A stretch of DNA of 64,000 bases from Hemiscyllium ocellatum. Taxonomy: Eukaryota. The notes below the pieces were generated by a model. It made no database searches and was not told the origin of the DNA. It saw only the letters and a program-made list of their open reading frames with translations. The translations under genes were made by a program, and so were the position numbers. Location of the stretch: assembly GCF_020745735.1 (NCBI RefSeq), contig NC_083416.1:79943131-80007130 (forward strand), read 5' to 3'. Shown here in pieces: positions 20,346-59,459 of this stretch; position 1 is the first letter of the stretch, and each line of letters begins with the position of its first letter.

Positions 20346-21819
20346 TACTGATAGATAGTTCTGATAAAGAATCATATGAAACACGAATCGTTAACTCTGT
20401 TTTTCTCTCTGCAACTGCTGCTGGGTTTTGCGAATTTCCCCATTACTTTCTGCTCTTATTTCACAATTCCAACATGCAGTATTTTGATTTTAACCTAATT
20501 TACCGGCACGCTCGAGACCTAAATGACCAACTAGAGCTTCTAACCCGTGCAAAAGTACGTATTTTGAAATCGTTCTCGTATTATTTTGAACCGGTTTGCA
20601 TAGGCCATTGATGAGTTAGAGCGTATGACAACATGAAGATAAAACCCGCGTCTTCTGCTTTCAACAGCTACACCTCCAGCTTTTATGCGAACAGATACCA
20701 TGTTTCTCCACATTTCCGTCATAACAAAGGTCATGCAACCCAGGATAGGGAAGTCAGCAGGTCACTATATTGAGAGCAGTGCTATTGAAGGAAATCATGA
20801 ATTGGTCAAATTCATTTCGGATGTTGCCGATGATCAAGGTGTACTTTTATGTTTCTCTTAGATCGGTTGAACATTCTGAAATTGAATTTATTTACTTGTC
20901 ACGTTGACCACAGTTTTTCAACAATTACTTTATTAATTAATATTAAAACGAGAAAGGTAAATATTCAGTATGGGCACACCTTCTGAATCTGGTGGACAGT
21001 GGAAATTCTTCCGGTATGTTGTTTACCTGTGAAGGGTCGTTCTCTCTCAGAATCCCTGCTTCTTAGTGACCAGTGCCTCAACGAGTATCTGTAGTCTTCT
21101 AGCTAGACTCTTAAATTAATTATCATGGGGTCAACATGTGGTAAAATCGAAATCTATTAGCTTCGTGTGCAGGAAGTGGGCAACTTTGTTTGACAAGACG
21201 TGTAAAACATACTACCAGACAGCGGGTCAGCCCTGTTGTCAAAGGTCAACGCCAGCTAATTTTTTGTATCGAATTAAAATGACATTTCACCGTGCTTCAC
21301 ACAACTCTTCTATACTATTATTGGGAACAGACGAGCTTTTATTTTTCATTGATGATGTTAGGGCTTTAAATTCTGATCTTCACAAGAAGTGAAGTGATAA
21401 TCAGATGCAAGTGTACGTGGTCTGAGTCTATGTGCAGCAAGAGAACATTTTCCAGCTGAATTCCTTTGAACATGAGCCAGCAAAACATCACCAGATCCAC
21501 GTTAAAATCCAGGATGTTGAATCTCCACAATGAGCAGCATCATTTAAAATCAGTCAAGAGAAGTGAACTTCACAGGTTGTGTTGACATTCCTATTTGTTC
21601 TTGAGAAGATGATGGCGAGATGCCTGCTTGAATCGCATCAATCATTGGGTATTGTTTCATCAACAATGCGTTTAGGGAGGAAGTTCCAAGACTGAGACCC
21701 AGATGCAGTAAAGATGCGCTGAAATAGTTACAAGTGAAATGATTGCGAGTTGATTGATTTGGCAATGATTGCTACACGCGTGCAGGACATATTCAGGTCA
21801 TTTTACACATGGTTCTGCA

Positions 21820-22320
21820 ATTGTCACTGTTGCAGCTGTCCTGCAGTAGCTTGGTAAGCAGCAAGTTCCGGAGCAGACTTCATCAGTATTTTTGCTGGAA
21901 TGTTGTCAGGGTCCAATGCCTTCGCAATGTTCAGTGCCTCCATAAGTTTCTTGGTACTACGCGAAGTGAATTGAAATGGCTGTAGCCTGGCATCTGTGAT
22001 TGTTTGGATATCTGCAGGTGGTTGAGCTGAACCATACATTCAGCACTTCTGGAGGAATATTTTTGTAAAGCTTCAGACTCCTCTTTTGCAGTGATATTCT
22101 GCGTCTCCTATTATCCATGAGCATTGACATAATGATATTTGTGGAACCTCCTCTGCCTTGAAACGGTTCCTCATCATATACCTCCATTCAGGATTTCAAG
22201 TGGCAAGACCACAGACTGTTTCGTTCTGATTCAGACCTTCTGGAATTTCTTAACCTAAACTGCCGCAGCTTGCTGTTTGGTACATAAGCGTTGTTGCTTC
22301 ATCATTTTGTTGCTTCACCA
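21820..22320 (-). mobile_element. L2/Crack-like LINE fragment (RT N-terminus)
   Basis: Minus ORF KKLMEALNIAKALDPDNIPAKILMKSAPELAA, the KAxGPDxIP motif. Confidence 0.65.
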
Positions 22321-22326
22321 AGTTTG

Positions 22327-22639
22327 TAGGATTAGATCGAGTAAACAGTGAGAGCCTTTTCCTCGGATGGTGATGGCTAACACGAGGGGACATAGCTGTA
22401 AATTGAGGGGTGTCAGATATCAGAGGTAAGTTATTTATTCAGAGAGTAGTAAGGGCGTGGAATGTCCTGCCTGCAACTCGCCAACTTTCAGGGCATTTAC
22501 ATCGTAAGTGGATAAACATATGGATGATAATGAAATAGTGAAGTTAGATGGGCTTCTGATTGGTTTGTCAGGTTGGCTCAGCATCAAGAACCGAAGGGCC
22601 TGTACTACGCTGTATTGTTCTATGTTCTATGTTCTATGT
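22327..22639 (+). mobile_element. CR1 3' end with (TTCTATG)n tail, nested in an older LINE
   Basis: CR1-type 3' sequence ending GAAGGGCCTGTACTACGCTGTATTG(TTCTATG)3. Confidence 0.75.
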
Positions 22640-25286
22640 CCGATGTTGACACTTCACTTTTGGGTATGTTTGCTGCTATTCATGGTATGTCCTACATTTT
22701 GCATTGAAACTGGATTGATCCCCAAACTTAAAGGTTGGCTGGGCAGTATGCATTTTGAACCGAGAGCTATGATAGCAGTAAAAGGTTTACACGTTAATTT
22801 TCCAATATATCCAACATTGACCTTTAAAAGCGAAGAACTTCAACCATTGTCCGCGATCCAGAATCTCATAAATTACGTTCATATTAATTAGGGCAATGGT
22901 TCCAAAATTGTAAGCGTCGCCAAAACTATACAGTTCAATCTGTTGTCAGTTTTGCTTCAACATATGGTTTCATCGACAGCTTCCCGTATCAAAGCATTGT
23001 GTAACATGGGAGAGTAGCTCACAATTCTGCTTCAAATATTCACTAGAATTTTGAATGATAATATAATCTATCAAACTAGGATTTAACGTCGCTTATTACC
23101 AGGTTTTTAGACTCAGTAGTGTTTTAGTGATACCAGAGGGTCTTCAGCCATACAATGAGTATGCAGAAGCTAAGATTGTTCCTCTTAGACATTACCGAAC
23201 AGATATCTATCAGTCAGAGAAAAAAGTTCCTTGTTAAATCTTTTATGTGTACCAAATATGTCTATATCTCGCCCCGTTCGAATTTAGCTGGTGTAGCTCC
23301 TACAAAACGCAATGCAACTCTTTGTTAAGGTTTCCTTCCCAAAATCTTCCAAACATGTGACCTCAACGAGTTAGAAATTTAAAGACAGCAAATAAATGAT
23401 TAAACCACCATCTGCAATTTATTCACTAAAGCCACACATAATCCTGATTTGGAATTTCAGTGCTATTCCTTCACAGTTCCTATGTTAATGTCCCGGAAGT
23501 CCATTGCTAAAAGCATTGCGGGTCTGCTAAAAGTGATGGACTGCCATTTTTAAAAAATGCAATTTTGTGCCAGCTTCTCAAGAGTACGAAAAGTGAGCAA
23601 AGTGTTGGCCTTGCCTGAGATGCCAACATCCCATAAAAGAGTGCAAAGTCAATGTTTTTATCTCGCCCACTGCCTCCCCACCCCCCGCCCCCCTTCTGGA
23701 GAAGTCTATTTCAATACATTCCTGGCAATGTCCCAAATCTCATTTTCGATATGCTTAGAGCCATGCAAATCTCAAACGAATATCAAGATTTGTTCACTCA
23801 TCAGACCTGTGTTTGTTGATATAAATAGCACTCAGTGGACCAGTACGTCGATTTAAAAAATTTCTATGCTTCTTCAAATGCTACAAAAGCCTTGTGTCCC
23901 TCTATGTCTGTAAACACTTCGAGGACCATAGCCTTTCGAAGTGTCTGCACTGCTCCAATTCCGGTGATTTATTCATTCTTGATTTTAATTGCTCCATCAG
24001 TGGGAGACTTCCTGCACCTGCCTTGGACCTTGCTTGCTTAATAATTCAGAATCACTTTGGATAAATCTTAAAACTTGTCTTTTTTGCAAGCTTTTGGCAA
24101 TTTGGTACATTAAATACTGGCGTGATTAATTGCTGGTTTGTTTTTATACTTGCTTTTGATAATTGTTCCTGTGAGGTGCATGCCATGATTGGCTACCGTA
24201 ACTTGGAAAAAGTAAATGCAAATTGCTGGTTTTATAAAATTACATGTTAAATTTTGATATTGTGCTGCTCACCTGTGCTTATTAAACTGAAGAATGCTCC
24301 ATAGTCAGTTCCATCAGCACGCCAGTAAGTTATGCAGAATGAAAAAGAATGCGTTGGATTCACTCAAAAGAAATGGCAGTATTTGAAATGAGCGTAAGAA
24401 AGTTGATGTTTCGAATTGTGTTTCTGAACACAACAGGTTCCCATCCAAGTTCATGGCACGAAACGTTAACCCGATGGATATCCCCGACCCCTTCCCCACA
24501 ACTGTTGTTAGGGCTGTTGTGTTTTTACATCTTGTTCTGTTTTATTTCATATCAGGAGCTCCAGATCTAGAATTTTAATTTTGACTCAGTTATATGGCAT
24601 GGTCTATTGGCTAGGAGTATTTAGAGAGCAGAGTTGCAGATAAAATTTTTCACTTGGTGTCTACCCTCAGGTTAATTTTTATGCAAGTATGTTAATTCTT
24701 TAGATATATTGACAAATGCATTCCTAGTTTCCTGACGTAACCCAACAGCAAAATAATTATTCAGCCCGTCAACATGATCGTTCGGGTGATCTGCAAATAA
24801 TATCAGTGACCAACAAGTGAAACTGAATCACAATATGCTGTATGTTACTGGGAATAGTGTCACGGTTACAGTAGGCATTTGAGTCCTGGGCGATCAGGAA
24901 GTATTTGGAACAAAACAGCAAATGTTGGAGAAATGAAGCAGGTCTGGCAGCCTCTGTGCAGGGAAAACACTCAACACACTTTTTCTGAACTCGAAGCATT
25001 TCTCTCCACAAATGTTACCAGCTCTGCTGAATATTTAAGGATTTTTTTTTGTTTCAGATTTCCAGCATCCACAGTTCTTTGTTTTGCTTTGCGTATTAAT
25101 TGGATATAGGATTCTAAGGAGAGTCAGCCTTTCTGCTGCTAAAGAACATTATTCCGATTTTACAAAGAATACTTAAAAAAGGGCCATTGCTTGTGTTTGT
25201 AAAAGATTTTTGAATTGCACATGCATCATCCTTTCATTTCGAGCAGTTGCAATAAATCCTGAAACAACATACTGTTCAGGACAAAT

Positions 25287-25333
25287 GCTGCAGTTATTGT
25301 TTGAGGCTGTTCGTGTCGCTGTCTACCAATAAG
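25287..25333 (+). promoter_or_regulatory. Orphan CSE/CTCF site upstream of Pcdh relic A
   Basis: TGCAGTTATTG 25289, CGTGTCGCTGTCTACCAAT with CGCT 25317; same 28-nt offset. Confidence 0.82.
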
Positions 25334-25587
25334 AAACTGAAACGCTGCCCTGCATCTGCAGTGCTTCTTTCTCCAGCTAAAGGATCACGGCGAAGAAGCG
25401 ACAAGACCAACAGTGCCTGCCTATGTGTCGTGCAACCATGAACTGCCAATCTCCTCGCGTCTGTGTTTCGTTTACTTCCTCTCTTCCTTTTAAAGTTTTG
25501 ACATGCATCCGTATCATTGTCCTGTAAGAGACAAGATAAAATAATCGACTTGCCGATCTATTTTACAGCAACATTCACCTGAGAACA

Positions 25588-25797
25588 ATGGCAATAATGA
25601 CGGGCTTGTGCCGGACCTCTTTACGAGGTCTTTGATCGGTTCCCGAGCAGCAGGAACACACGCCCTTTGTTGAAAATATCGCTGAGTATTTGAGACCACG
25701 TATGTCGGAATTATCCACGTGGACATCTCGGCTGGTCTTTGATGAAATAAATTAGTACGTTGAGATTAATTTTGGAAATCTGAGTTATGTTTGCTAA
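25588..25797 (+). pseudogene. Protocadherin 5' relic A (start + first part of EC1)
   Basis: From 25636 it reads SVPEQQEHTPFVENIAEYLRPRMSELSTWTSRLVFDEIN*YVEINFGN, aligning to gene 2 SIPEELEYGAFVGNIAEDLSLNVRELSARKFRIVSDSRKQYMEVNLKN; ATG context gagaacaATGGC resembles gene 2 gagcaATGGC; internal stops. Confidence 0.85.
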
Positions 25798-25809
25798 TTA
25801 ACCGCTGAG

Positions 25810-26096
25810 AGTCGTAATGGGGAGACATTTGTGTGGAGGCAACCCAATGCTTTTGGGACGTGGGTTCGAATCCCACAGCGGGAGGTAAGTTTGAATTTAA
25901 AGTTAACGTGACGGCGAGAGTTGGCCTGATGGTAGGTTGATATACAAACCCATTCCTTACAGGGGAGGCAAACTACTGATCATAGCTGCTGCATGTGACT
26001 CCAGATGTACAGCAATATGGTTAGCAATTTATATGGATGGGCCATAAATGCTGACCAAGCTGATGAAGTCCCCGTCCAGCAGAGCAATAAAAAAAC
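25810..26096 (+). mobile_element. tRNA-derived SINE abutting relic A
   Basis: B-box GGTTCGAATCC 25863-25873, A-rich end at ~26090; boundaries approximate. Confidence 0.7.
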
Positions 26097-26149
26097 GGAT
26101 TCAGCCTACAGTCCTAAAGTTGCTGCAGTATGAAAGAGTGACAGAGGTG

Positions 26150-26278
26150 ATTCATGAAGAAGGGCTCATGTCCGTAACGTCGATTCTCCTGTTCCTTGGA
26201 TGCTGCCTGACCTGCTGCGCTTTTCCAGCAACACATTCTCAGCTCTGATCTCCAGCATCTGCAGTCCTCACTTTCTCC
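26150..26278 (+). mobile_element. Short Penelope-derived insertion unique to unit A
   Basis: Absent at 41165-41180 and 56528-56545; flanked by imperfect direct repeats aagagtgacag / aagagagaaag. Confidence 0.7.
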
Positions 26279-28835
26279 AAGAGAGAAAGAATGCCTGTTT
26301 CAGGCATCAGACATTCAAATTGTCATATATCTCGCCCATAGCCTTGCATGTTATGACGTCCACGTGTTCATTTAAATAGTTGTCTTTTGAGGTTTCCTGT
26401 TTCCACCACCGTTTAAGACAGTGAAGTCAAGATGTCCATAACCCCCTCGTTGAAGAAAAATCCTTAAATCAGTTCTAAATATCCTGATCCTTATGTTAAT
26501 ATTAACCCCTTTAAATTGGGGGAGAGTTTCTCTTTACCTTGGCTTTTATTGTCCCTCGGAACTTTGTATCCCTCAATCTCAATGTCTCCCATCCTTCTCT
26601 GCGGTAAGGGAATCAATCACAGTTTATCTCGGTTTTTTTTGCGTAGCTGAATCTCTTCAGTCAAGCCAACATTCTGGCGAATTTTTTTTTTCACTCCACC
26701 TTGAATAATCACATCCTTCGTCTGTTGTGGCGACCAGAATTGCACACAGTGCTCCTGCTGTGACCAAACCTAGGTTGCAGCCAGCTCAAATATCGTTACC
26801 TTGCTCTTGCATTCAGGCAGAGTAACCAGAGGACAGAGTTATGCACTGTTGCATACGTTCTCTTTGTTTGCTAATGCAAGTGGGTAATTATTTGAAAAAA
26901 GAACTCCTTGCTGCAGTGAGAATATTATATGTAGACGATTTCCAAATAACGACTTCAGTTGCAGTCGAGTCATTCAATTAAGCTATTGAAAAGCGAAAGA
27001 CCAGCTGCCAGTCCTAACATAATCAATGCTTCCTAGGTCTTTCCTAAGAGATGGCTTGGAGTCCCATTGCGACTGTGGTAGTATTAAAATTCAATAAAAA
27101 TCTGATCTCAACAACTAGTCGAATGGGGATGTAATTAATTCTGCGATATTATTACTTCGATGGCAAGAAGTTGCAAAGTGTCGATGTATAAAGAGATCTG
27201 GGTATCCTCATCAATGTGTCACTGAAATCTAACATACAGGTGCAGCCAGCTGCTAGGAAGGTTAAACGAATATTAATCTTCAATTCAAGAGGATTTGTGC
27301 TTGTAGATAATCGAGTACTGGTTCAATTTTGAAGAAGATAGCTTCCATGGCAGAGGCAGTATTTTACACAGTACCTGAAGAACGTTATCATTGACACAGA
27401 GGGAGCCCGGAACAGGACTTGATTCTCTGATGGCGTGACTGTCCTATGAAGAACATTGGGCAAATTGAAGATGTATTCTCTAGGGTTTAGAAGAAGTGAT
27501 CTCTTGAAACCTGCAGCATAATTAAAGGGAAGGACAAAATAGATTTGGGTTTTGTTTAGATTTTGTTGTCACGTGCACACAAATACAAATATAACCGAGC
27601 ATACTGAAAAGTTTTCAATGTTGCTACACACAATGGTTTATCTTAGGTACAAGTATCTCGATACAAAAAAGTTAAATACAATTGTAGAAAGATATAAGGA
27701 ACAAAGTTAAAAGTTAAATATTAAAATCACTGCATCACAGATGCAGGAGAGATGATTCCATTGGATGGGGATCCTAGTCCCATCAGGGACAATTAAAAAT
27801 AAGGAATACCAACGTTGGAATAAGGTGAGGAGATTTTTTGATTAAATCGTTGTAAACCCTTGGAATTCCGAACACAGAGTGCTGAAGAAGCTCAATCTTC
27901 AAGTATGGTTTAACTATGTTGAAAACATATGTTGACACTTCTCTCGCTACCAACGGGGTAGAGATTAGTGGGGATAGATAATGAAAGACATTAAAGTATT
28001 AGATTAGTAATGATCGCGCTAAATAATGTGAAAGGCTGAATGACCTACTCCTGCTTCCATGTTTCTCAGTCTGATCACTGAAAATACAACATTGCGCGTG
28101 CTGTGCGTTCCATGGACTGCGTTCTCTTTTGGGAAATCTTCTACTGTAATCTGCTACCAGTGGCGTCATCTTTGCTGTCCACGTTTGTCCACCATCGATG
28201 CCGATCGTTGCGATTTTACATCATATGTCGATCTACGTCTCTTCCTTCGAAATCTTACACAAAGCCTAACATTTAAACCATTTAGAATTTGTCACTCACT
28301 TTAACAGATTCGTTTTCGTTTTAAAAGCTATTACTGCCCCTTGTGCGTTTTTATGATGACGGCTCGAGATTCTCGCATTCTTACTCTTTTTCTATGTTTC
28401 CGTTCATTCTTCACCTTATGAATATAAACTGCACCCACGCCGCACTTCAACATCTGAGGCATCATGAGCATGATTCATGACTTGCGTTTACTTATGAGAT
28501 ATTAAAACACGATTTTCCTTAATCAAGTAAATTATTTTTAAAAGCAGATTGCGGTATAGAACATTCGAGTTCAGTGATGCTTCAATCTTGGAGCTATTCA
28601 GTTTGGTGTCGGTCTAGTTATCGGGCCATTTTCGCAGTGTTTAATAATTGTATATTCCGATTTGAGATGCTTCAAAAAGTCACTCACTAAAAGCCTACAA
28701 ACACCAAGGATTTGGGTCAATGTGATGATGGTCAGTTTGTTATGTTTATCAAAGAATATGAAAGGATATTCTGGATATTTTTAATTGTACACCCATAATC
28801 TGACAAGATCGCTGGAAGGTCTAGCTTTAAGAATA

Positions 28836-28882
28836 GTTGCAGTTATTGGGCGAAACTCCTCGTGTCGCTGTCGACCAATAAG
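28836..28882 (+). promoter_or_regulatory. CSE/CTCF site plus CCAAT, gene 3 promoter
   Basis: TGCAG 28838, CGCT 28866, CCAAT 28875. Confidence 0.88.
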
Positions 28883-29076
28883 AATTTGAGACGTTGGAAG
28901 AGATCGACCGCCTCCTCCTTGACAAACAGAACCATACGGGCAGTCGGTGTCTGCGTTTCTCGTGTACGGACACGGTCAGAAAAGCTCTCCAGGTGATATC
29001 CTTAACGTTGCTCTGTTCAAAAATAGGATATTGACATACAGCTAGTTATTTTTTCTGTTAGAATTGACGCATCAGT

Positions 29077-31476
29077 ATGACAATGGCGACTGTTGTGATG
29101 AGCCGAGTGTCCATTTTTTTGCTCTGCATTTCTGCCCTGGTTTCCGAACAACTTCGCTACTCGATTCCCGAGGAAATGGAACATGGAACCTTTGCTGGCA
29201 ACGTCGCTGACGATCTAGGATTAAGGGTTTGGGAGTTACCGACTCGCAAATTACTGCTGATTTCTGATTACTCGAAGAAATACATGGAGGTAAATGTAGA
29301 AAATGGTTTCCTTTTTGTTAATGAAAGAATCGACAGAGAACAGCTTTGTAGCAAAACCGCTGCATGTTCTCTTTCTTTCCAAATCACGCTCTATGATCCT
29401 TTGGAAATGTATCCCGTTGAAGTGGAAATACTAGACGTAAATGATAATTCACCCGTCTTTTCGAGGAAGGAATTCGATTTGCAAATTAATGAGTTAATTG
29501 CGCCGGGCGCTCGCTTCCCTCTCGAGAGCGCACGTGATCTGGACGTGGGTAAAAACACAATCAACACCTACCAGATCAATCCGAACGAGCACTTCGGTAT
29601 TAAAGTGCAGACAAGAAGAGGGGGGAATAAAAATGTCGAGCTGATATTAAAGAGGCATTTGGACCGTGAACAACAGTCAATGTTTACTCTAGTGTTGACG
29701 GCTATCGATGGTGGGATTCCGCAGAGATCTGGCACAGCGCGGATCATCATTAATGTCATGGACGCAAATGACAACACACCCGTATTCGATCATGAAACCT
29801 ACAGGGCGTCAGCGATTGAAAACATTGCGAATGGCACTTTAGTGCTAAGAGTTCATGCTACTGATATTGATGAAGGGACAAACGCGGAGATAACATATTC
29901 TTTCACTCATTACGTTTCCCAGAATATTCGTGATTTGTTCAAATTGGATCCTGTGTCTGGAGAAATCAGAGTTCGAGGTGTACTAGATTTTGAAGAAACA
30001 AATGTTTATGAATTTGACGTTCAAGCAATGAACTCCGCTCCACCTGAATTCTCAACTCTTGCAAATGTTGTCATTGATGTAATTGACACTAATGATAATA
30101 CTCCTGTGTTGCAAGTTACGATGGTGTCCAGTGCTGTGCGGGAAGATTCTTCTTCGGGAATTAGTGTAGCTCTGATCGGCGTCACGGATCGCGATTCTGG
30201 CGAATATGGGGAAGTTCATTGTCAAATCCCAGAGAATATTCCCTTCAAGATTGAAAAATCTTTGAAGGGCAACTACAAGTTGATTACCAATGGCTTTCTG
30301 GATCATGAGATTACCCCACTGTACAACATCTCCATTTCAGCCTGGGACGGTGGATTTCCTCCTCTTTCAGCGAGTACATTAATTGTGGTTTCAGTAATTG
30401 ATGTCAATGATAATTCACCAAGTTTTACGCAGTCGTCATATAACGTTTATCTGATGGAGAATAACGCACCCGGTGCTTCTATATTTGCTGTTAGTGCAAA
30501 TGATGCTGATTTGAATCAGAATGCAGAAGTCTCTTATTCCATTGTCGACAATCGACAGAAAGAAGAAATACCTTCCTCTGCGTACTTTACGATGAACTCC
30601 AAAAATGGGAACATTTACGCGCTTCGCTCCTTCGACTACGAGCAACAGAAACATTTCCAGGTGAAAGTTCAAGCTCAGGATAGTGGGTCGCCTCCATTGA
30701 CCAGCACTGCCTTTGTGAATGTTATTATTTTGGATCAAAATGACAATGCACCCATTATTGTTTCACCTTTAACATGGAACAGCTCAGCAATAGTGGAGGT
30801 AATACCCCTTTCAACATATCCAGGATATCTGGTCACCAAGGTAATTGCCACGGATGAAGACTCTGGTCAGAACGCAAGGCTTTCCTACGAGTTATTGGAA
30901 ACCACTGATCCAAGTCTTTTTACTGTTGGACATCTCTCTGGAGAAATTAGAGCAACGCGAGCATTTAGTGATCAAGATATCATTGACGTGCGCGTGGTCC
31001 TCAGCGTGAAGGACAATGGACAGCCGAGCCTTTCCAGCAGGGCCACAATATCCTTTATCGTAAAGTCCAATGTTACTGAGAAATCATTTGAACAACGTGA
31101 TGGACCCAGACACTCGGAATATTTTTCAGGTATAAATAGTTATCTAATCATAATTTTCGGATCCACTTCCTTTTTGTTTCTCATAATAATATTATTTTTG
31201 CTCACCCTGAAGTGCAGACAAGATAGAAATACTGCTGAAATTTATAGCTCTGCAGTCTGTTGTTGTAATGGGGGAAATTCGACTGATGCCTTTAATCGGA
31301 CACCAACAGGAAGGGATCCTTTGAATTATAGCGGGGCAGTTCAGACCGGAAGTTATCATTACAGTGTGTGCTTGTCACCGGAATCATCGAAGAGTGACTT
31401 TCTGTTTTTAAAACCTTGTCATCCTACGTTGCCTTTCAACGATCGGAGTGTTCGTGACAGCAACGCAAGAAACTAA
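29077..31476 (+). CDS. Clustered protocadherin variable exon (gene 3)
   Basis: 799-aa ORF, 6 EC + TM + tail; close paralog of genes 4/5; the start may be the second ATG (29083). Confidence 0.97.
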   Translation: MTMATVVMSRVSIFLLCISALVSEQLRYSIPEEMEHGTFAGNVADDLGLRVWELPTRKLLLISDYSKKYMEVNVENGFLFVNERIDREQLCSKTAACSLSFQITLYDPLEMYPVEVEILDVNDNSPVFSRKEFDLQINELIAPGARFPLESARDLDVGKNTINTYQINPNEHFGIKVQTRRGGNKNVELILKRHLDREQQSMFTLVLTAIDGGIPQRSGTARIIINVMDANDNTPVFDHETYRASAIENIANGTLVLRVHATDIDEGTNAEITYSFTHYVSQNIRDLFKLDPVSGEIRVRGVLDFEETNVYEFDVQAMNSAPPEFSTLANVVIDVIDTNDNTPVLQVTMVSSAVREDSSSGISVALIGVTDRDSGEYGEVHCQIPENIPFKIEKSLKGNYKLITNGFLDHEITPLYNISISAWDGGFPPLSASTLIVVSVIDVNDNSPSFTQSSYNVYLMENNAPGASIFAVSANDADLNQNAEVSYSIVDNRQKEEIPSSAYFTMNSKNGNIYALRSFDYEQQKHFQVKVQAQDSGSPPLTSTAFVNVIILDQNDNAPIIVSPLTWNSSAIVEVIPLSTYPGYLVTKVIATDEDSGQNARLSYELLETTDPSLFTVGHLSGEIRATRAFSDQDIIDVRVVLSVKDNGQPSLSSRATISFIVKSNVTEKSFEQRDGPRHSEYFSGINSYLIIIFGSTSFLFLIIILFLLTLKCRQDRNTAEIYSSAVCCCNGGNSTDAFNRTPTGRDPLNYSGAVQTGSYHYSVCLSPESSKSDFLFLKPCHPTLPFNDRSVRDSNARN

Positions 31477-31504
31477 CTTCGACAACAATATATTCTTTTT
31501 GTGG

Positions 31505-31513
31505 CAGGTAATT
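31505..31513 (+). other. Putative 5' splice donor downstream of gene 3 stop
   Basis: CAG|GTAATT, GT at 31508, 31 nt after TAA. Confidence 0.6.
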
Positions 31514-34500: not shown

Positions 34501-35130
34501 TCTGCTGTCCTGGCCTATATGATGGAGGTTGGCGTGGGCTTGGAAGAAGCTGTATAGGGATCTACGACGAATTTCTGATCAGTAATTGAAGTTGCAAGCA
34601 GGAAGCACTGTAGTCGATTTGTGCCTACTCAGACCCCGAAAGCACCCATAACGATAATGGACAGAGTGTTGAGTGCATGTGGTGCTGTTTGAATAATTGA
34701 CCACCACTATCTAGGATTGCATTTGGCACGATTTATTTTAGTGCGGGGGGCATGGGGGCGTAATTTAGCTGAAGATCTAAACTTTCTTGCCATTTCGCAA
34801 AAGCTTCAAGTTTTAGCTTCACCGTGCTTATAGCTCGTTCAAAGTCTGCTAATGCAACTGGTGTATTTACGCAGACAGCATATTAATTCAGGTTTTCTAA
34901 TCTGAATTAATGGTAATGTATGGACGTGAGTAATTTAAAAGGCCTACAGATTGTGAAGCTACATATTGTGCTGTTTTACATATTTACTGCTGTTGCCCCA
35001 TATTACTAAATTAGTACTGATACTTTAATTCATCGATATTAGTTAAGATAGGAAGGCAAACAGCTCAAAGAGCCACTGTACCAGGCACTCCATCCAGTTT
35101 TGACTCGTCAATTGAGTCAAGTTCAATCGG

Positions 35131-35382
35131 ATGGTAATCCAAGATGGTGGTCTGAAGAAAATTTAGGCTTTAACAGGCTGCTCCTTTTTTGAGGAATTTT
35201 ACATGTTAGAGATGATTCCCTCAAATTGCTGGAGCAGGAATTGCTGTTTCATATGCTGTTGCGTTGCTTTGGAACTTTGCGGAAAAAAAAAGACGTCAAA
35301 GCAACATCACTTTTAAAAGGCAGAAGGACAGACAAAGGCAGCACATGATGATGTCAGCGCAGGAGAGAGAGAGAGAGAGAGG

Positions 35383-35419
<37 letters not shown>

Positions 35420-39821: not shown

Positions 39822-40299
39822 AAGTGAAACTGAATCACAATATGCTGTATGTTACTGGGAATATTGTCATGATAACAGTAGGCATTTATTGACCTGGACG
39901 ATCATGGATTACTTGGAATATAACAGCAAATGTTAGAGAAACGCAGTAGGCCTGGAAGCCTCGTGTGGAGAAAACATTCAACATTATTCTGAACTCGACC
40001 CATTAATTGTTTTCTCTCCACAAATGCTACCAGGTCTGCTAAATTTTCGGATTTGTTTTTGTTTCAGTTCTCTAGCATGCACAGTTCTTCGTTTTGCTTT
40101 GCTTATTAATTGGAAATACGATTCCAAGGAGAATCAGCCTTTCTACTGCGAAGGAACGTTATACCGATTTTGCAAAGAATACGAAAAAAAAGCATACTAT
40201 TATTTCTGTTTCTAAAGGATTCTGGAATTGCATATGCACAGTCCTTTCATTTCATGCAGAAGCAATAAATCTTGAAACAATATATCATTCAGGACTATT

Positions 40300-40346
40300 G
40301 TTGCAGTTATTGTTTGAGGCTGTTCGTGTCGCTGTCTACCAATCAG
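40300..40346 (+). promoter_or_regulatory. Orphan CSE/CTCF site upstream of Pcdh relic B
   Basis: TGCAG 40302, CGCT 40330, CCAAT 40339. Confidence 0.82.
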
Positions 40347-40601
40347 AAGCTGAAACGCTGCCCTGCATCTGCAGTGCCTCATTCTCCAGCTAAAGCACCA
40401 CAGCGAAAAAGCGACAAGACCAACAGTGACTGCCTATGTGCTGTGCAGCCATGAACTGCCAATCTCCTCGGGTCTGTGTTTCGTTTACTTCCTCTCTTCC
40501 ATATTAAAGTAATGACATGCATCCGTACCATTGTCCTGTAAGAGACTGGATAAGGTCATCGATTTGCCGATCTATTTTACAGCAACGTCCACCTGAGAAC
40601 A

Positions 40602-40816
40602 ATGGCAATAATGAGCGGGCCCGATTTGGACCTCTTTACGGTGCGAGCCCCTTGATCGTTCCCAAACAGCAGGAACAAAAACCCTTTGTTGAGAATATCG
40701 CTGTGTATTTGAGACTAAGTATGTGGGAATTATCCACGCAGGCATTTCGTCTTGTCTTTGATGGAAGACGTTAGTACATTGAAGTTAATTTGGAAATTTG
40801 AGGTGTATTTGTTAAT
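40602..40816 (+). pseudogene. Protocadherin 5' relic B
   Basis: The end of ORF 40517..40774 reads VPKQQEQKPFVENIAVYLRLSMWELSTQAFRLVFDGRR* and continues YIEVNLEI*GVFVN. Confidence 0.85.
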
Positions 40817-40829
40817 TAACCGCTGAGCG

Positions 40830-41127
40830 TCGCAATGGGGAGGTATTTGTGTAGATGTAATAGCAGTCAGAAATCTAATGCTCTGGGCCCGTGGGTTCGA
40901 ATCCCACTGCAGAAGGTGAGTTTTGAATTTAAAGCTGATGTGAAGTCGAGAGTTGGCCTGATGGTAGGTTGATGTTCAAACCCATTCCTTAGAAGGGTGG
41001 CAAACTACTGATCACAGCTGCTGCATGTGATTCCAGATGTACAGGAATATGGTTAGCAATTTATGTCGATGGGCCATAAATGCTGACCAAGTTGATGAAG
41101 TCCTCGTCCAGCAAAGCAACAAAAAAG
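40830..41127 (+). mobile_element. tRNA-derived SINE abutting relic B
   Basis: B-box GGTTCGAATCC 40894-40904; duplicate of the unit A copy. Confidence 0.7.
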
Positions 41128-44100
41128 CGGATTGAGCCGAGAGTCCTAAAGTTGCTGCAGTAGGAAAGAGAGACTGTGTGTCTGTTTTGGGCATCAGACA
41201 TTCAAATTCTCATATATCTCGCCTATAGCCTTGCATGTTACGACGTCCACGTGTTCATCTAAATAATTGTCTTTTGAGGTTTCCTGTTTCCACCAACGGT
41301 TAAGACAGTGAAATCAAGATGGCCACAAATCCCTCGTTGAAGAAGAAAAATCCTTAAATCAGTTCTAAATATCCTGATCCTTATGTTAATATGACGTCGT
41401 TTTGATTATTGACCCCTCTAAATAGGGGAAACGTTTCTCTCTACCTTGGTTTTTATTGTCCGTCGGAACGTTGTACCACTCAATCGTAATGACCCTCATC
41501 CTTCTCTGCGGTAAGAGAATCAATCACAGTTTACCTCTTTTTTTTTCGTATGAATCGCTGCAGTGAAGACAACACGCTCCCTTATTTAATCACATCCTTC
41601 GTACGTTGCAACCAGAATTGCACAATGCATCTCCCCTGACCAAACTCACGTTACAATCAGCTCAAACATAGTTACCTTGCTCTTGCATTCAGACAGAGCG
41701 ACCAGAGGACAGAATTATGCAGCGCTGTATCCGTTCTCTTTCTTTGTTAATAGATGTGGGTAATTATTAGAAAATACTCCCTGCTGCTGTGCGAATATTA
41801 TATGTAGTCGATTCCAAATGAAGATTTCAGTTGTAGCCCAGACATTCAATTTACTTGCTGAAAGATCACAAGACCAGATGCCGGTCCTAACACAATCAAT
41901 ACTTCCTAGATCTTTCTTAAGAAATGGCTTGGAGTCCCATTGCGACTGTGGGTGGCATTTTATCTAATCTCCATAACTAGTCGAATGGAGATGGAATTTA
42001 AAGTCTGTGATATTATTACTTCAATGGCACGAAATTGCAAAATGTCGATGTATAAGCAGATCTGGGTATCATCATCAATGTGTCACTAAAGTCTAACATA
42101 CAGGTGCAGCAAGCTGCTACGATGGCTTAACGAATATTTATCTTCAATTCAAGAGGATTTGTTTTATAGATAATTGAGTACTGGTTCAATTTTGTAGAAG
42201 GTAGCTTCAACGGCAAAGGTAGTATTTACACAGTACCTGAAGAACGTTATTATTGACACAGAGGGATTAGAGCACAGGTTCATCAGACTTGTTCCTCTGA
42301 TGGCATGACTGTCCTATGAAGAACATTGGGCAAATTGAAGGTGTATTCCCTAGGATTTAGAAGAAGTGATCTCATTGAAACCTGCAGCATAATTAAAGGG
42401 AAGGAGAAAACAGATTTAGATTTTGTTTGGATTTTATTGTCACGTGCACTCAAAAACAAATGCATCCGAGTATATTGAAAAGTTTTCACTGTCGCCACAC
42501 ACAATGGTCCGTATCTCGATACAAAACGTTAAGAATAAGGTAAAAAGAAATAAGGAACAAAGGTAAAAGTTAAATATTACAGTTACTACACTACAGATGC
42601 AGAAGAGATGATTCCCTTGGTTGGGGATCCTAGTCATTCCAGGGACAATTAATAATAAGGGATGCCCACGTTGGACGAGGATGAGGAGATTTTTTGATGA
42701 AATATTGCAAACCCTTGGAAATCCCAACACAGAGTGCTGTAGAAGCTCAATCCTCAAGGATGGTTTAACTATGCTTTAAACATATTTTGATTGTTTTCTA
42801 GCTACCAACGGGGTAGAGATTTGTGGGGATAAATGATGAAAGACGTTAAAGTGTTAGATTACTCATCATCGCATTAAATAACTTGACAGCCTGGCAGGCT
42901 GAATGACCTACTCCTGCTTCCATGTTTCTGGGTCCGATTACTGGAAATGCAACATTGGGCGTGCTGTGCGGTCCATGGACTGCATTCTCTTTTGAAAAAA
43001 TCTTCTATTGTAATCTGCTACCAGTGGCTTCATCTTCAGTGTTCACGTTGTCCACCATCGAGGCCGATCGTTCCGATGTTACATCCATATGTCGGTCCAC
43101 TTCCTTCGAATTCTTAGACAAAACCTAACATTTAAATCATTTAGGATTCGTCACTCATTTTAACAGATTTGTTTTCGTTTCAAAAGCTATTACTTCCCCT
43201 TGTGCGTTTTTATGATGATGGACCGAGATCCTCACATTCTAACTCTTTTTCTCTGTTTCCGTCCAACTCATTTTTCATTCTTAACCTCACGAATATAAAC
43301 AGTACCCACGCTGCACTTCAACATCTGCCGCTTCATGAGCATGTTTCATAACTCGCCTTTACTTCTGCGATGTTAAAGCATACTTTTCCTTAATCAGTGA
43401 CTTATTTTCAAAAGCAGATTGAGGTATAGAACAATCGAATTCGGTGATACTTCAATCTTGGAGCTATTCTGATGGTGTCGGTCTAGATATCGGGGCAATT
43501 TTTGCAGTGTTTAATGACTGTACAGTGAGATTTGAGATGCTTCAAACGTAACTCACTGAAAGGCTGCAAACACCAACGATTTTGGTTGATGCGATGATGT
43601 TCAGTTTGTTATGTTTATCGAAGAATATGAAAGGGTACATAGTTGCCTATCTCATTCTTTCCATGTAAACGCATGGGTTAATTAGTTTCTCGCAATACAG
43701 ACGTACAGGCATTTTCTTAGTTTCAACAGAATGCCAGCAGAATATCTAGATTTTGGATCAGCGCACCTAATTATTGGGCATATACTTTCTTAGAAACGGT
43801 CAGGGTGCCGCTGTTTGATTCTGGACGAGGGGTAATAGGTTCACCAGATGTGTATTCCAGAAACATTAAAAATGAGGTAGCGAAGGTGAAAAGAACGAAA
43901 TAAACTGATTTGTGAGGACTCCTGAGGGAGAGAAAAAAAATCAATTACCAACGTAGCGATTACTATCAGTGTTATTTAACAAAAGAAAATTAGTGTCTCG
44001 GAAATATTGTCAGCTTTTTCAAATACCAGCGATATCTACACACTTTTAGAATGATTAACTCGTATGTAAAGCCTAGAAATACTTGTAAATTTCGTAAGCT

Positions 44101-50928: not shown

Positions 50929-50960
<32 letters not shown>

Positions 50961-55186: not shown

Positions 55187-55664
55187 AAGTGAAACTGAAT
55201 CACAATATGCTGTATGTTACTGGGAATATTGACATGATTACAGTAGGTATTTATTATCCTGGACGATCATGGATTACTTGGAATATAACAGCAAATGTTA
55301 GAGAAACACAGTAGGTCTGGCAGCCTCGTGCAAAGAAAACAATCAACATTCTTCTGAACTCGACCCATTAATTGTTTTCTCTCCACAAATGCTACCAGGT
55401 CTGCTAAATTTTCGGATTTTTTTTGTTTCAATTCTCTAGCATGCATAGTTCTTCATTTTGCTTTGCTTATTAATTGGAAATACGATTCTAAGAAGAATCA
55501 GCCTTTCTGCTGCAAAAGAACTTCATACCAATTTTGCAAAGAATACGAAAAGAAAACCATGCTCTTATTTGTGTTTCTAAAGGATTCTGGATTTGCATGT
55601 GTACCGTCCTTTCATTTCATGCAGAAGCAATAAATCTTGAAACAATATATCATTCAGGACTATT

Positions 55665-55711
55665 GTTGCAGTTATTGTTTGAGGCTGCTCGTGTCGCTGT
55701 CTACCAATCAG
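55665..55711 (+). promoter_or_regulatory. Orphan CSE/CTCF site upstream of Pcdh relic C
   Basis: TGCAG 55667, CGCT 55695, CCAAT 55704. Confidence 0.82.
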
Positions 55712-55966
55712 AAGCTGAAACGCTGCTCTGCATCTGCAGTGCCTCATTCTCCAGCTAAAGCACCACAGCGAAAAAGCGACAAGACCAACAGTGACTGCCT
55801 GTGTACCGTGCAGCCATGAACTGCCAATCTCCTCGCGTCTGTGTTTCGCTTACTTCCTCTCTTCCATATTGAAGTAATGACATGCATCCGTACCATTGTC
55901 CTGTAAGAGACAAGATAAGGTCATCGATTTGCCGCTCGATTTTACAGTAACGTCCACCTGAGAACA

Positions 55967-56180
55967 ATGGCAATTATGAGCGGGCCTGTGTCGGACCTCT
56001 ACGGGACTAGCCCTTTGATCGATTCCCGAACAGCAGGAACACAAACCCTTTGTTGAGAATATCGCTGAGTATTTGAGACCAAGTATGTGGGAATTATCCA
56101 CGCGGACATCTCGGCTGGTCTTTGATGAAAGACGTTAGTACATTGAGGTTAATTTGGAAATTTGAGTTGTATTTGTTAAT
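55967..56180 (+). pseudogene. Protocadherin 5' relic C
   Basis: Reads SIPEQQEHKPFVENIAEYLRPSMWELSTRTSRLVFDERR*YIEVNLEI*VVFVN. Confidence 0.85.
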
Positions 56181-56189
56181 TAATCGCTG

Positions 56190-56489
56190 AGAGTCGCAAT
56201 GGGGAGACATTTGTGTGGATGTGATAGCAGTCAGAAATCTAATGCTCTGGAGACGTGGGTTCGAATCCCACTGCGGGAGGTGAGTTTTGAATTTAAAGTT
56301 GATGTGAAGTGAGAGCTGGCCTGACGGTAGGTTGATGTACAAACCCATTCCTAGAGGGGTGGCAAACTACTGATCACAGCTGCTGCATGTGATACCAGAC
56401 GTACAGGAATATGGTTAGCAATTTATATGGATGGGCCAATAAATGCTTACCAAGCTGATGAAGTCCTCGTCCAGCAAAGCAACAAAAAA
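56190..56489 (+). mobile_element. tRNA-derived SINE abutting relic C
   Basis: B-box GGTTCGAATCC 56258-56268; duplicate of the unit A copy. Confidence 0.7.
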
Positions 56490-59459
56490 TGCAGATTGAG
56501 CCTAGAGTCCTAAAGTTGCTGCAGTAGGAAAGAGAGACAGTGTGTCTGTTTCGGGCATCAGACATTCAAATTCCTCAATATCTCGCCGATTGCCTTGCAT
56601 GTTACGACGTCCACGTGTTCATCTAAATAGTTGTCTTTTGAGGTTTCCTATTTCCACCACCGTTTAAGACAGTGAGGTCGATATGTCCACAACTCCCTCG
56701 TTGAAGAAGAAAAATCCTTAAATCAGTTCTAAATATCCTGACCCTTATGTTGATATTACGTCGTTTTGATTATTGACCCCTCTAAATAGGGGAAAAGTTT
56801 CTCTCTCCCTTGGCTTTTATTGTCCCTCGGAACGTTGTACCACTCAATCTCAATGCCCCTCATCCTACTCTGCGGTAAGAGAATCAATCACAGTTTACCT
56901 CTTCTTTTTTCGTTGCTGCATCACTGCAGTCAAGACAACACGCTCCCTTATTTAATCACATCCTTCGTACGTTGCAACCAGAATTGCACAATGCATCTCC
57001 CCTGACCAAACTCACGTTGCAATCAGATCAAACCTTGCTCTTGCATTCAGACAGATCGACCAGAGGACAGAGTTATGCAGCGCTGTATCCGTTCTCTTTC
57101 TTTGTTAATACAAGTGGATAATTATTAGAAAATACTCCTTGCTGCATTGCGAATATTATATGTAGTCGATTTCCAAATGAAGATTTCAGTTGTAGCCCAG
57201 ACATTCAATTTGCTTGATGAAAGATCACAAGACCAGATGCCGGTCCTAACACAGTCAATGCTTCCTAGATGTTTCTTAAAAGATGGGTTGGAGTCTGTGA
57301 CTGGGAGTGGTATTTTATCTAATCTCCATAATTAGTCGAATGGAGATGTAATTTAAAGTCTGTGATATCATTACTTGAATGGCATGAAATTGCAAAGTGT
57401 CGATGTATAAACAGATCTGGGTATCCTCATCAATGTGTCACTGAAGTCTAACATACAGGTGAAGCAATCTCCTACGAAGTCTAAACAAATATTAATCTTC
57501 ATTTCAAGAGGATTTGTTTTATAGATAATCGAGTACTGGTTCAATTTTATAGAAGGTAGCTTCCATGGCAAAGGCAGTACTGTGTAAAATATTGACACAG
57601 AGGGAGTACAGCACAGGTTCATCAGACTTGTTCCTCTGATGGCGTGACTGTCCTGTGAAGAACATTGGGCAAATTGAAGGTGTATTCCCTAGGATTTAGA
57701 AGAAGTGATCTCATTGAAACCTGCAGCATAATTAAAGGGAAGGAGAAAACAGATTTAGATTTTGTTTGGATTTTATTGTCACGTGCACTCAAAAACAAAT
57801 GCATCCAAGTATATTGATAAGTTTTCACTGTCGCCACACACAATGGTCCGTATCTCGATACAAAACATTGAGAATAAGTTGAAATGAAATAAGGAACAAA
57901 GGTAAAATTTAAATATTACAGTCACTACATTACAGACGCAGAAGAGATTATTCCCTTGGTTGGGGATCCTAGTCCTACCACGGCAATTAATAATAAGGAA
58001 TGCCCACGCTGGACGAGGATGAGGAGATCTTTTGATGAAATACTTGCAAACCCTTGGAAATCCCAACACAGAGTGCTGTAGAAGCTCAATCTTCAAGGAT
58101 GGTTTAACTATGCTTTAAACATATTTTGCTAGTTTTCTAGCTACCAACGGGGTAGAGATTTGTGGGGATAAATGATGAAAGACGTTAAAGTGTTAGATTA
58201 CTCATGATCGCGTTAAATAACTTGACAGCCTGGCAGGCTGAATGACCGACTCCTGTTTCCATGTTTCTGGGTCCGATTACTGAAAATGTAACATTGGGCG
58301 TGCTGTGCGGTCCATGGACTGCATTCTCTTTTGAAAACTCTTCTATTGTAATCTGCTACCAGTGGCCTCATCTTCGATGTTCACGTTGTCCATCATTGAG
58401 GCCGATCGTTGCGACGTTACATCCATATGTCGGTCTACTTTCTTCCTTCGAATTCTTAGAACAAACCCATCATTTAAACCATTTAGGATTCGTCACTCAT
58501 CTTAACAGATTTGTTTTCGTTTCAAAAGCTATTACTTCCCCTTGTGCGTTTTTATGATGATGGAATGAGATCCTCACATTCTAACTCTTTTTCTCTGTTT
58601 CCATCCAACTCATCTTTTCATTCTTAACCTCACCAATATAAACAGTACCCACGCCGCACTTCAACATCTGCAGCTTCATGAGCATGTTTCATAACTCGCA
58701 TTAACTTTTGCGATGTTAAAGCATACTTTTCCTTAATCAAGTGAATTATTTTCAAAAGCAGATTGAGGTATAGAACAATCGAATTCGGTGATACTTCAAT
58801 CTTGGAGCTATTCAGTTTGGCGTCGGTCTAGATATCGGGGCAATCTTTGCAGTGTTTAATGACTATATAGTGAGATTTGAGATGCTTCAAAACGTAACTC
58901 ACTAAAAGACTGCAAGCACCAACGATTTTGGTCGATGTGATGATGTTCAGTTTGTTCTGCTTATCGAAGAATGTGAAAGGGCATATAGTTGCCTATCTCA
59001 TTCTTACCATGTAACCGCATGGGTTAATTAGTTTCTCGTAATACAGACGTACAGGCATTTTCTTAGTTTCAACAGAATGCTAACAGAATATCTAAATTTT
59101 GGAGCAGCGCACCTAATTATTGGGCATATACTTTCTTAGAAACGGTCAGGGTGCGGCAGTTTGATTCTGGACGAGGGGTAATAGGTTCACCAGAAGTGTA
59201 TTCCAGTAACATTCAAAACGAGGTAGCGTAGGTGAAAAGAACCGCATAAACTGATTTGTGAATATTCCTGAGGGAGAGAAAAAAAAATCTGTTTCCAACG
59301 TAGCGATTACTATCAGTGTTATTTAACAAAAGAAAATTGGCGTCTCGGAAATATTGTTAACTTTTTGAAGTACTAGCGATATCTAAACACTTTTAGAATC
59401 ATTCACTCGTATGAGACGCCTAGAAATACTTGTAAATTTCGTACCCTACGATTTATTAA

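What the first reader, a model, noticed from the sequence alone, without database searches (positions are those of the whole stretch)
25287..25890. Orphan Pcdh promoter + EC1 relic + SINE-supplied splice donor: candidate 'null' variable exon in every repeat unit
Seen: an intact CSE (TGCAG..28 nt..CGCT, CCAAT) lies 271-272 nt before a relic ATG. The relic has stops, lacks most of the signal-peptide hydrophobic core and ends mid-EC1 where a SINE begins. That SINE has a consensus 5' splice site in all three copies: GAG|GTAAGT (GT 25885), AAG|GTGAGT (40916), GAG|GTGAGT (56280). A related-looking SINE at ~10462-10510 has no such donor. Established: clustered Pcdh isoforms are chosen through CTCF-bound CSE promoters, with splicing from the cap-proximal donor. 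Inference: promoter + short non-coding first exon + donor could be a selectable blank isoform, or a CTCF decoy/insulator that tunes choice of the gene ~3.5-4 kb downstream.
Basis: partly seen in the sequence, partly recalled or inferred. Interest (0 to 1): 0.85.

Follow-up and report, generated by a model that had tools for sequence, protein, structure and literature searches.

The report
Dead protocadherin exon keeps conserved promoter core
Each repeat unit of this shark protocadherin cluster carries the stump of a long-dead gene copy in which only a roughly 50-base promoter core has stayed unchanged across four shark species, so that short DNA element, not the proposed "blank" transcript with its SINE splice site, is probably the working part.

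Summary
The window, very likely Hemiscyllium ocellatum, has five intact protocadherin (Pcdh) variable exons and three "orphan" promoter cores (CSEs) at 25289, 40302 and 55667. Each is followed by an EC1 relic with stop codons, a tRNA-like SINE and a consensus splice donor.

The three copies are not independent. They are one ancestral locus carried along in a 15.4-kb tandem duplication.

I fetched orthologous loci from Chiloscyllium punctatum, Rhincodon typus and Stegostoma tigrinum. All have the same orphan, with a shared stop codon, so the exon was already dead before these families split.

The orphan CSE core holds the longest invariant run (48 nt) in a 4.6-kb four-species alignment. It changes at 0.125 steps per site against 0.467 in the background (P about 2e-6). 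The 5'UTR, relic, SINE and donor all evolve at the background rate.

The donor exists only in Hemiscylliidae. Whale shark and zebra shark have no comparable donor within 1 kb. The orphans have also lost a downstream block (AGAGATCNACC) found in every functional promoter examined, and their CpG content is close to background. No canonical CTCF motif is present at any CSE.

Verdict: this is a selected "solo CSE", most likely a DNA-level regulatory element. The SINE-donor "null exon" is not what is being conserved.

The parts
25285..25347 (+). Orphan CSE core, unit A. This is the ancestral copy, collinear with the whale-shark orphan.
   Evidence: 59 of 64 columns are invariant in the HocA/Cpun1/Rtyp/Stig alignment, against 0.66 in the background. 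A 48-nt invariant run starts at 25286. Collinearity with L001 is shown.
40298..40360 (+). Orphan CSE core, unit B
   Evidence: Its 42-nt core is identical to A.
55663..55725 (+). Orphan CSE core, unit C
   Evidence: One T>C change within the 42-nt core.
25348..25587 (+). Former 5'UTR of the dead exon. It lacks the AGAGATCNACC block of functional promoters.
   Evidence: 0.466 steps per site, equal to background. Block absent. CpG o/e is 0.88 for the orphan A interval 25289-25588 (CSE to ATG), against 1.08-1.36 in functional promoters.
25588..25800 (+). EC1 relic, unit A: ATG, a signal peptide with a 19-nt deletion, and EC1 residues about 28-85 with stops
   Evidence: tblastn. The stop at the Q67 codon is shared with Rhincodon and Stegostoma. 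0.493 steps per site.
40602..40820 (+). EC1 relic, unit B
55967..56184 (+). EC1 relic, unit C
25804..26101 (+). Probable old tRNA-derived SINE, unit A (B box at 25863-25873, A-rich tail; 13 nt around the A box deleted)
   Evidence: nhmmer profile hit, B box, weak tRNA-clan hit. Present at the same site in all four species. Evolves neutrally.
40822..41133 (+). SINE, unit B
56186..56497 (+). SINE, unit C
25882..25890 (+). Consensus 5' splice site GAG|GTAAGT inside the SINE, unit A
   Evidence: PWM score 7.65. Found only in Hemiscylliidae.
40913..40921 (+). AAG|GTGAGT, unit B
   Evidence: PWM score 8.40
56277..56285 (+). GAG|GTGAGT, unit C
   Evidence: PWM score 7.53. An NCBI model exon ends at the paralogous position.
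28818..29076 (+). Functional promoter and 5'UTR of the downstream variable exon (g3), used as the comparator
   Evidence: The best 64-nt window here has 61 of 64 columns invariant. It has the TAGCTTTAAGAAT, ATTGG, core and AGAGATCGACC blocks.

Best explanation
The element is the stump of an ancient clustered-protocadherin variable exon. It keeps the promoter CSE, the 5'UTR and about 85 codons, and is cut off at an old tRNA-like SINE. The exon was already dead (shared stop codon, shared truncation, shared SINE) in the common ancestor of Hemiscylliidae and the whale-shark/zebra-shark lineage. In Hemiscylliidae it was then copied passively, together with the downstream intact exon, by a 15.4-kb tandem duplication.

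Shown: only a core of about 50-64 nt (TGCAGTTATTGTTTGAGGCTGTTCGTGTCGCTGTCTACCAATAAG...) is under purifying selection. Everything a transcript would contain evolves neutrally.

Inferred: the core survives as a 'solo CSE', a binding site for the factor(s) that recognise the CSE. It would act on the DNA and chromatin in cis, in one of three ways:
- competing with neighbouring promoters for the cluster's enhancer;
- insulating neighbouring promoters;
- serving as a distal tether for the exon 3.8-4.8 kb downstream.

On this reading it does not matter what RNA, if any, it starts. The SINE splice donor is a later, lineage-specific and so far neutral feature.
For: - Orthology and age: L001 2047-6181 is collinear with window 21739-26138. 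The orphan, relic and SINE are present in Chiloscyllium, Rhincodon and Stegostoma. A stop at the Q67 codon is shared across species.
- Selection on the core: the 42-nt CSE is identical in all four species, while the surrounding DNA is 72-75% identical between Hemiscyllium and Rhincodon or Stegostoma. The best 64-nt window has 60 of 64 columns invariant, against a maximum of 50 in 3,696 background windows. It equals the functional promoter at 61 of 64.
- Invariant run: the longest in the 4.6-kb alignment is 48 nt at 25286, longer than any in the functional promoter or at the start of the coding sequence. Binomial P is about 1e-6. Fitch counts give 0.125 steps per site against 0.467, Poisson P about 2e-6.
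- Neutral remainder: 5'UTR 0.466, relic 0.493, SINE head 0.463, SINE body 0.446, donor 9-mer 0.78 steps per site.
- No longer a full promoter: the AGAGATCNACC block is present 37 nt after the core in all 5 window promoters and in the promoters from Chiloscyllium, Rhincodon, Stegostoma and Heptranchias, but absent from all 7 orphans. CpG o/e is 0.65-0.88 in the orphans against 1.08-1.36 in functional promoters.
- Orphan-specific bases (ATTGT, GAGGCTGTT) are conserved, so the core has not been overwritten by the neighbouring g3-type promoters.
Against: - There are no expression, chromatin or binding data, so the mechanism is inferred from conservation alone.
- The factor is unknown. The CSE does not match the CTCF consensus.
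- Only four species from one order could be sampled, and only about 175 kb of shark sequence. A functional paralogue elsewhere in the cluster with an identical core could in principle act as a gene-conversion donor.
- The donor is among the strongest in the window and is kept in 4 of 4 hemiscylliid copies, with only consensus-compatible changes. An NCBI model uses it. So a transcript-level role in that family is not excluded.
Confidence: 0.6

Rival explanations
1. Null variable exon. The orphan promoter fires, the short non-coding exon is spliced from the SINE donor to the cluster's downstream exons, and a neuron that picks it makes a 'blank' isoform.
For: The CSE core is conserved. There is a very strong donor 596-614 nt downstream of the CSE in all four hemiscylliid copies. 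The changes within the donor (A or G at position -3, A or G at +3) keep the consensus.
Against: - The donor is absent in Rhincodon and Stegostoma, where the CSE is just as conserved.
- The donor, 5'UTR and relic evolve at the neutral rate.
- The orphans lack the AGAGATCNACC block of every functional promoter and have CpG content close to background.
- The functional exons end with their own stop codon, so a shared coding constant region is not evident.
- The only gene model that uses the donor joins it to the next variable exon, not to constant exons.
Confidence: 0.1
2. Distal alternative promoter or leader exon of the downstream gene. In Hemiscylliidae, transcripts that start at or run through the orphan are spliced from the SINE donor to an acceptor just upstream of the ATG of the next intact variable exon. 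This gives that exon a second, upstream CSE-driven start.
For: - NCBI model XP_060692627.1 (P0127) contains a 30-residue segment that is a translation of an orphan SINE head. It ends exactly at the SINE donor and is followed by residues from just upstream of the next exon's ATG.
- Polypyrimidine-AG sites (TTTTTTCTGTTAG, CATCAG) lie 1-25 nt before the ATG of the g1 and g3-g5 type exons in all four species.
- The orphan and the downstream exon are always duplicated together.
Against: - The model is an automated chimera of three variable exons and needs a non-GT donor before the stop codon. Whether RNA supports it is unknown.
- In that model the SINE exon is internal, not a first exon.
- Whale shark and zebra shark lack the donor but keep the CSE.
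- The leader sequence evolves neutrally.
Confidence: 0.15
3. Inert relic. The whole stump is junk, and the invariant core reflects gene conversion from functional CSEs or a local mutation cold spot.
For: Pcdh clusters are known for gene conversion (PMC4978886 summarises this). Identity between the units varies by region (82-90%). The CSE is a family-wide motif, so donors exist. The Heptranchias functional CSE is 90% identical to the orphan over 63 nt.
Against: - Conversion within a genome cannot keep four species identical unless the donor itself is constrained and identical. None of the 12 functional CSEs examined has the orphan's sequence.
- Orphan-specific bases are conserved.
- The conserved tract is only about 50-64 nt, with neutral DNA directly on both sides in every lineage.
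- The chance of a 48-49-nt invariant run is about 2e-9 at the background rate.
Confidence: 0.1

Closest known systems
Conserved sequence element (CSE, 'CGCT box') of clustered protocadherin promoters. In mammals it is a CTCF/cohesin site used in stochastic promoter choice and acts as an insulator for upstream promoters (reviewed in PMC7811963; PMC4978886).
   Same: It has the same core (GTGTCGCTGTC..CCAAT) as the five functional promoters of the window. It has the same orientation and sits at a similar distance from an ATG (271 nt from the CGCT box). It is as conserved across species as a functional CSE.
   Different: It is not followed by a usable exon. It lacks the AGAGATCNACC block and the CpG richness of functional promoters. 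Neither it nor the functional shark CSEs match the CTCF consensus, so the bound factor is unknown.
Pseudogenes and 'relics' of variable exons in human and mouse Pcdh clusters (Wu et al. 2001, cited from my own knowledge and not read here; pseudogenes are shown in the figure legend of PMC8787164).
   Same: It is a truncated, disabled variable exon lying between intact ones, a product of the birth-and-death evolution of the cluster.
   Different: Here one short part of the relic, the promoter core, is shown to be under purifying selection across shark families while the rest decays. I found no report of this for the mammalian relics in four of the five literature searches run.
Paired CTCF sites of Pcdh-alpha promoters (the CSE plus an exonic site about 700 bp downstream) and other non-promoter CTCF sites of the cluster (PMC7811963).
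   Same: It is an extra CSE-type site in the same orientation, placed near a promoter. It could work with or against that promoter in looping or insulation.
   Different: It lies 3.8-4.8 kb upstream rather than 0.7 kb downstream, derives from a dead exon, and no binding has been shown.
Exonised SINEs, where a repeat supplies a splice site (general knowledge).
   Same: A strong 5' splice site lies inside a tRNA-like SINE, downstream of a promoter-like element.
   Different: The donor is confined to one family and evolves neutrally. Its use is suggested only by an automated gene model.

Membership tests
Clustered Pcdh CSE-type promoter | CGCT-box core about 200-300 nt upstream of the start codon, in the same orientation as the exons | tested here: met
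   Core pattern with 0 mismatches at 25313, 40326 and 55691. 8 hits against 0.02 expected, all on the + strand. 271 nt from the CGCT box to the relic ATG.
Clustered Pcdh CSE-type promoter | Downstream promoter block AGAGATCNACC(N)CCTCC, shared by all functional promoters of this cluster type | tested here: not met
   Present in the 11 functional promoters checked for it (5 species), absent from all 7 orphans.
Clustered Pcdh CSE-type promoter | Drives an intact variable exon | tested here: not met
   Only EC1 residues about 28-85 remain, with stops and a frameshift.
Clustered Pcdh CSE-type promoter | CpG-rich promoter region | tested here: not met
   CpG o/e is 0.65-0.88 in the orphans, 1.08-1.36 in the functional promoters and 0.66 for the whole window.
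Clustered Pcdh CSE-type promoter | Transcription starts downstream of the CSE | not testable with these tools
   No RNA or CAGE data were available.
CTCF binding site | Match to the core consensus CCASYAGRKGGCRSY | tested here: not met
   Only one hit with 2 or fewer mismatches in the 64 kb, at 712-726 and not at any CSE.
Pcdh variable-exon pseudogene or relic | Homology to a variable exon, with disabling mutations | tested here: met
   tblastn E-values down to 1e-8 against the window's own proteins and 8e-17 against Heptranchias P0010. Stops are shared across species.
tRNA-derived SINE | tRNA-like head with A and B boxes, an A-rich tail, about 300 nt long | tested here: inconclusive
   The B box GGTTCGAATCC is exact and an A-rich tail lies at about 26090. 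There is only a sub-threshold tRNA-clan hit. ARAGORN finds no tRNA.
tRNA-derived SINE | Many dispersed copies in the genome | tested here: inconclusive
   The profile search finds only the orthologous and paralogous copies in about 153 kb. The whole genome was not searchable.
Functional 5' splice site | Consensus sequence | tested here: met
   PWM scores of 7.5-8.4. These are 3 of the 5 best + strand sites in the window.
Functional 5' splice site | Conservation across species above the neutral rate | tested here: not met
   Absent in Rhincodon and Stegostoma. 7 steps in 9 sites.
Functional 5' splice site | Use in transcripts | not testable with these tools
   The only evidence is the automated NCBI model, whose exon ends at the paralogous donor.

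The most novel reading that the evidence does not exclude
The conserved solo CSE is a built-in 'blank ticket' in stochastic promoter choice. When it is chosen in place of a neighbouring promoter, that allele expresses nothing useful from this part of the cluster. Selection therefore keeps such decoys to set how often, or in what combinations, the flanking isoforms are chosen. In Hemiscylliidae the decoy was multiplied together with each new exon copy.
Probability: 0.15. Interest if true: 0.85.

Novelty: new variant of a known kind. Interest (0 to 1): 0.55.

Why it matters
Protocadherin promoter choice gives each neuron its surface identity, and the CSE is its key cis element. Here a CSE core has been maintained after its exon died, across shark families that are 25-30% diverged at neutral sites. 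That shows a CSE can have a selectable function apart from making a protein isoform.

This gives a natural test case for whether CSE sites act as decoys, insulators or tethers. It also shows how tandem duplication spreads such elements together with new exons.

Finally, it is a caution. The eye-catching SINE splice donor is the part that is not conserved.

Tried and rejected
- SINE consensus test: an nhmmer profile of the six copies found no other family member in the window and loci L001-L004, about 153 kb. BLAST of the SINE against the window found only the three unit copies. So I could not decide whether the donor is the family's consensus state.
- The '10462 SINE' is not related by profile search and has no B box.
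- Deeper orthologues: no DNA could be fetched for the new Chiloscyllium punctatum assembly, C. plagiosum, Cetorhinus, Heterodontus, Scyliorhinus torazame or H. ocellatum itself. P0046 was not on record.
- The Heptranchias locus has only functional CSEs. A second whale-shark locus has one functional CSE of a different type and no orphan.
- CTCF consensus scan: nothing at any CSE.
- Rfam: nothing above threshold in the orphan region.
- Nearest living paralogue of the relic: none stands out. Identity is 50-60% to many proteins.
- Literature: four searches found no paper on conserved orphan CSEs or relic promoters. Yu et al. 2008 on the elephant-shark clusters is not held.
- Short relic ORFs were not looked up in transcript assemblies, because none is conserved.
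- The ATTGG>ATTGT change looked like an orphan-specific defect, but a functional whale-shark promoter also lacks ATTGG, so I dropped it as an argument.

Full report
**What the window is.** The window holds five intact ORFs of about 800 aa for clustered protocadherin variable exons, at 1970, 13670, 29077, 44551 and 59929. The closest proteins are from Chiloscyllium (89-90%) and Rhincodon (84%). The best family-level names are elephant-shark Pcdh epsilon. Two cluster members masked as 'own genome' match the g3 and g4 sequences read from their second Met by eye. They lie on the same 87.76-Mb contig as a named Hemiscyllium ocellatum protein. The window is therefore very likely H. ocellatum.

Self-comparison shows a tandem unit of about 15.4 kb: A 24815-39821, B 39822-55186, C 55187 to the end. 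A is 82-90% identical to B and C. B is about 92.7% identical to C.

**Checking the observation.**
- The CSE core pattern occurs 8 times, all on the + strand with no mismatches, against 0.02 expected (regex). Five sites lie 239-268 nt before the intact ATGs. Three are orphans.
- The orphan ATG is at 25588, 40602 and 55967.
- tblastn finds only EC1 residues about 28-85 after it, with in-frame stops. No further Pcdh homology occurs before the next promoter.
- A tRNA-like element of about 300 nt follows, at 25804-26101, 40822-41133 and 56186-56497. It has an exact B box and an A-rich tail.
They are 3 of only 5 + strand sites scoring 7 or more on an approximate 5' splice-site matrix.

The description is accurate. 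The three copies are paralogues from one duplication, so 'in every repeat unit' is one event, not three.

**Cross-species test.** I fetched the orthologous loci through the nearest proteins: Rhincodon typus (L001), Stegostoma tigrinum (L002) and Chiloscyllium punctatum (L003).
- All three carry the same orphan CSE, relic and SINE upstream of the orthologous intact exon.
- L001 2047-6181 is collinear with window 21739-26138. Unit A's orphan is therefore the ancestral one, and the duplication arose within Hemiscylliidae. The second C. punctatum copy groups with units B and C.
- A stop at the Q67 codon is shared by Hemiscyllium A, B and C, Rhincodon and Stegostoma. The truncation point and the SINE are shared by all four species. 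The exon was dead before these families separated.

**What is and is not conserved.** In a four-species alignment of 24815-29400:
- The orphan CSE block has 59 of 64 invariant columns, against 0.66 in ungapped background (binomial P about 1e-6).
- Its best 64-nt window scores 60 of 64, against a maximum of 50 in 3,696 background windows. The functional promoter scores 61 of 64.
- The longest invariant run in the whole alignment is the 48 nt starting at 25286. That is longer than any run in the functional promoter or in the first 320 nt of coding sequence.

Fitch counts on six orphan copies:

| Segment | Steps per site |
|---|---|
| CSE | 0.125 (Poisson P about 2e-6) |
| Background | 0.467 |
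| 5'UTR | 0.466 |
| Relic | 0.493 |
| SINE head | 0.463 |
| SINE body | 0.446 |
| Donor 9-mer | 0.78 (7 steps in 9 sites) |

Selection therefore acts on about 50-64 nt of DNA and on nothing a transcript would contain.

**The donor.** Hemiscyllium (three copies) and Chiloscyllium have GAG|GTRAGT. Rhincodon has GGTGGTGATGAAGT and Stegostoma has GGTCGTGGCGGAGT at the aligned place. Neither has any site scoring 5 or more within 1 kb downstream of the CSE. The donor is thus a hemiscylliid-specific state. Whether it was gained or lost cannot be decided without an outgroup or the SINE family consensus, which I could not obtain.

**Is the orphan still a promoter?** I aligned 10 functional promoters and 7 orphan promoters.
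- The 10 aligned functional promoters, including two from Heptranchias, share an upstream block (TAGCTTTAAGAAT), the core, and a downstream block AGAGATCGACCGCCTCCTCC.
- The orphans keep only the core.
- The downstream block sits 37 nt after the core in all five window promoters and at none of the orphans. It is also present in a more distant whale-shark promoter.
- CpG o/e is 1.08-1.36 in functional promoters, 0.65-0.88 in the orphans and 0.66 window-wide.

The orphan's distance from CSE to ATG (299 nt) and its start context (GAACAATGGC) match the Heptranchias functional genes (300-301 nt). Its CSE is 90% identical to theirs over 63 nt. It descends from that kind of exon.

**CTCF.** In mammals the CSE binds CTCF (PMC7811963, PMC4978886). 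No CSE in this window, functional or orphan, matches the 15-mer consensus with 2 or fewer mismatches. The identity of the factor is therefore open. The core does contain a CCAAT box.

**A gene model that uses the donor.** NCBI's automated model XP_060692627.1 (P0127, 2518 aa) chains g5 with the next two variable exons beyond the window.
- Its second linker is a translation of an orphan SINE head and ends exactly at the SINE donor. The paralogous window positions are 25821-25889, 40839-40895 and 56203-56281. The linker then continues with residues from just upstream of the next exon's ATG.
- Polypyrimidine-AG sites lie 1-25 nt before the ATG in all g1 and g3-type exons.
- This raises a rival use for the donor: a leader exon for the next variable exon rather than a 'blank'.
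- The model is a chimera, it needs a non-GT donor before the stop codon, and its RNA support is unknown.

**Conclusion.**
- Shown: this is an ancient dead exon whose promoter core alone is maintained by selection. The donor is lineage-specific and neutral.
- Inferred: the core works as a solo CSE at the DNA level, as a decoy, insulator or tether for neighbouring promoters.
- Gene conversion is an unlikely explanation. Orphan-specific bases are conserved, no identical functional CSE was found among 12 examined, and neutral DNA abuts the core in every lineage. Only part of the cluster could be examined, so it cannot be fully excluded.
- The null-isoform reading remains possible in Hemiscylliidae, but it is not what conservation supports.

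Noticed in passing
window 4361-4399, 31477-31515, 46954-46992, 62332-62370: Four of the five intact variable exons (all but g2) have an in-frame stop 31-33 nt before a conserved CAG|GTAAT donor (PWM 4.6 for the three g3-g5 sites). NCBI annotates them as proteins of 797-800 aa. Any downstream exons would be 3'UTR for these isoforms.
   Followed up: partly
window 34418-34529 and 49964-50074: A 111-nt 'mini-exon' with canonical AG|...|GT flanks lies about 3 kb downstream of each variable exon. The NCBI chimeric model XP_060692627.1 uses it as a linker. It could be a real 3' exon of the cluster.
   Followed up: partly
window 28985-29076 (also about 44460-44550 and 59838-59928): A possible short 5'UTR intron in the functional exons. 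The donor is CTCCAG|GTGATA and the acceptor is CATCAG|T, one base before the ATG. The NCBI model uses it. A polypyrimidine-TAG site lies about 25 nt before the ATG and is conserved in four species.
   Followed up: partly
window 26145-26278: A second SINE-like insertion (motif ...CCAGCATCTGCAGTCC...) is present in unit A and in the orthologous Chiloscyllium copy. It is absent from units B and C, Rhincodon and Stegostoma.
   Followed up: partly
window 18003-19473 (+) vs 38344-39821 and 53679-55186 (inverted): Inverted copies of a repeat about 1.5 kb long (76% identical) end exactly at the tandem-unit junctions.
   Followed up: no
window 25830-25845 vs 40848-40870: Unit A's SINE has lost about 13 nt (the A-box region TGTRATAGCAGTC) that all other copies and species keep.
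   Followed up: partly
L004 13788-14069 (Heptranchias perlo): A C-terminal relic of a variable exon (residues about 705-799) lies 1.4 kb downstream of an intact exon. This is another kind of Pcdh stump, without a CSE.
   Followed up: no
window 36000-40000 and 50000-55000: Strong positive GC skew (0.35-0.39) over the repeat-rich 3' part of each unit.
   Followed up: no
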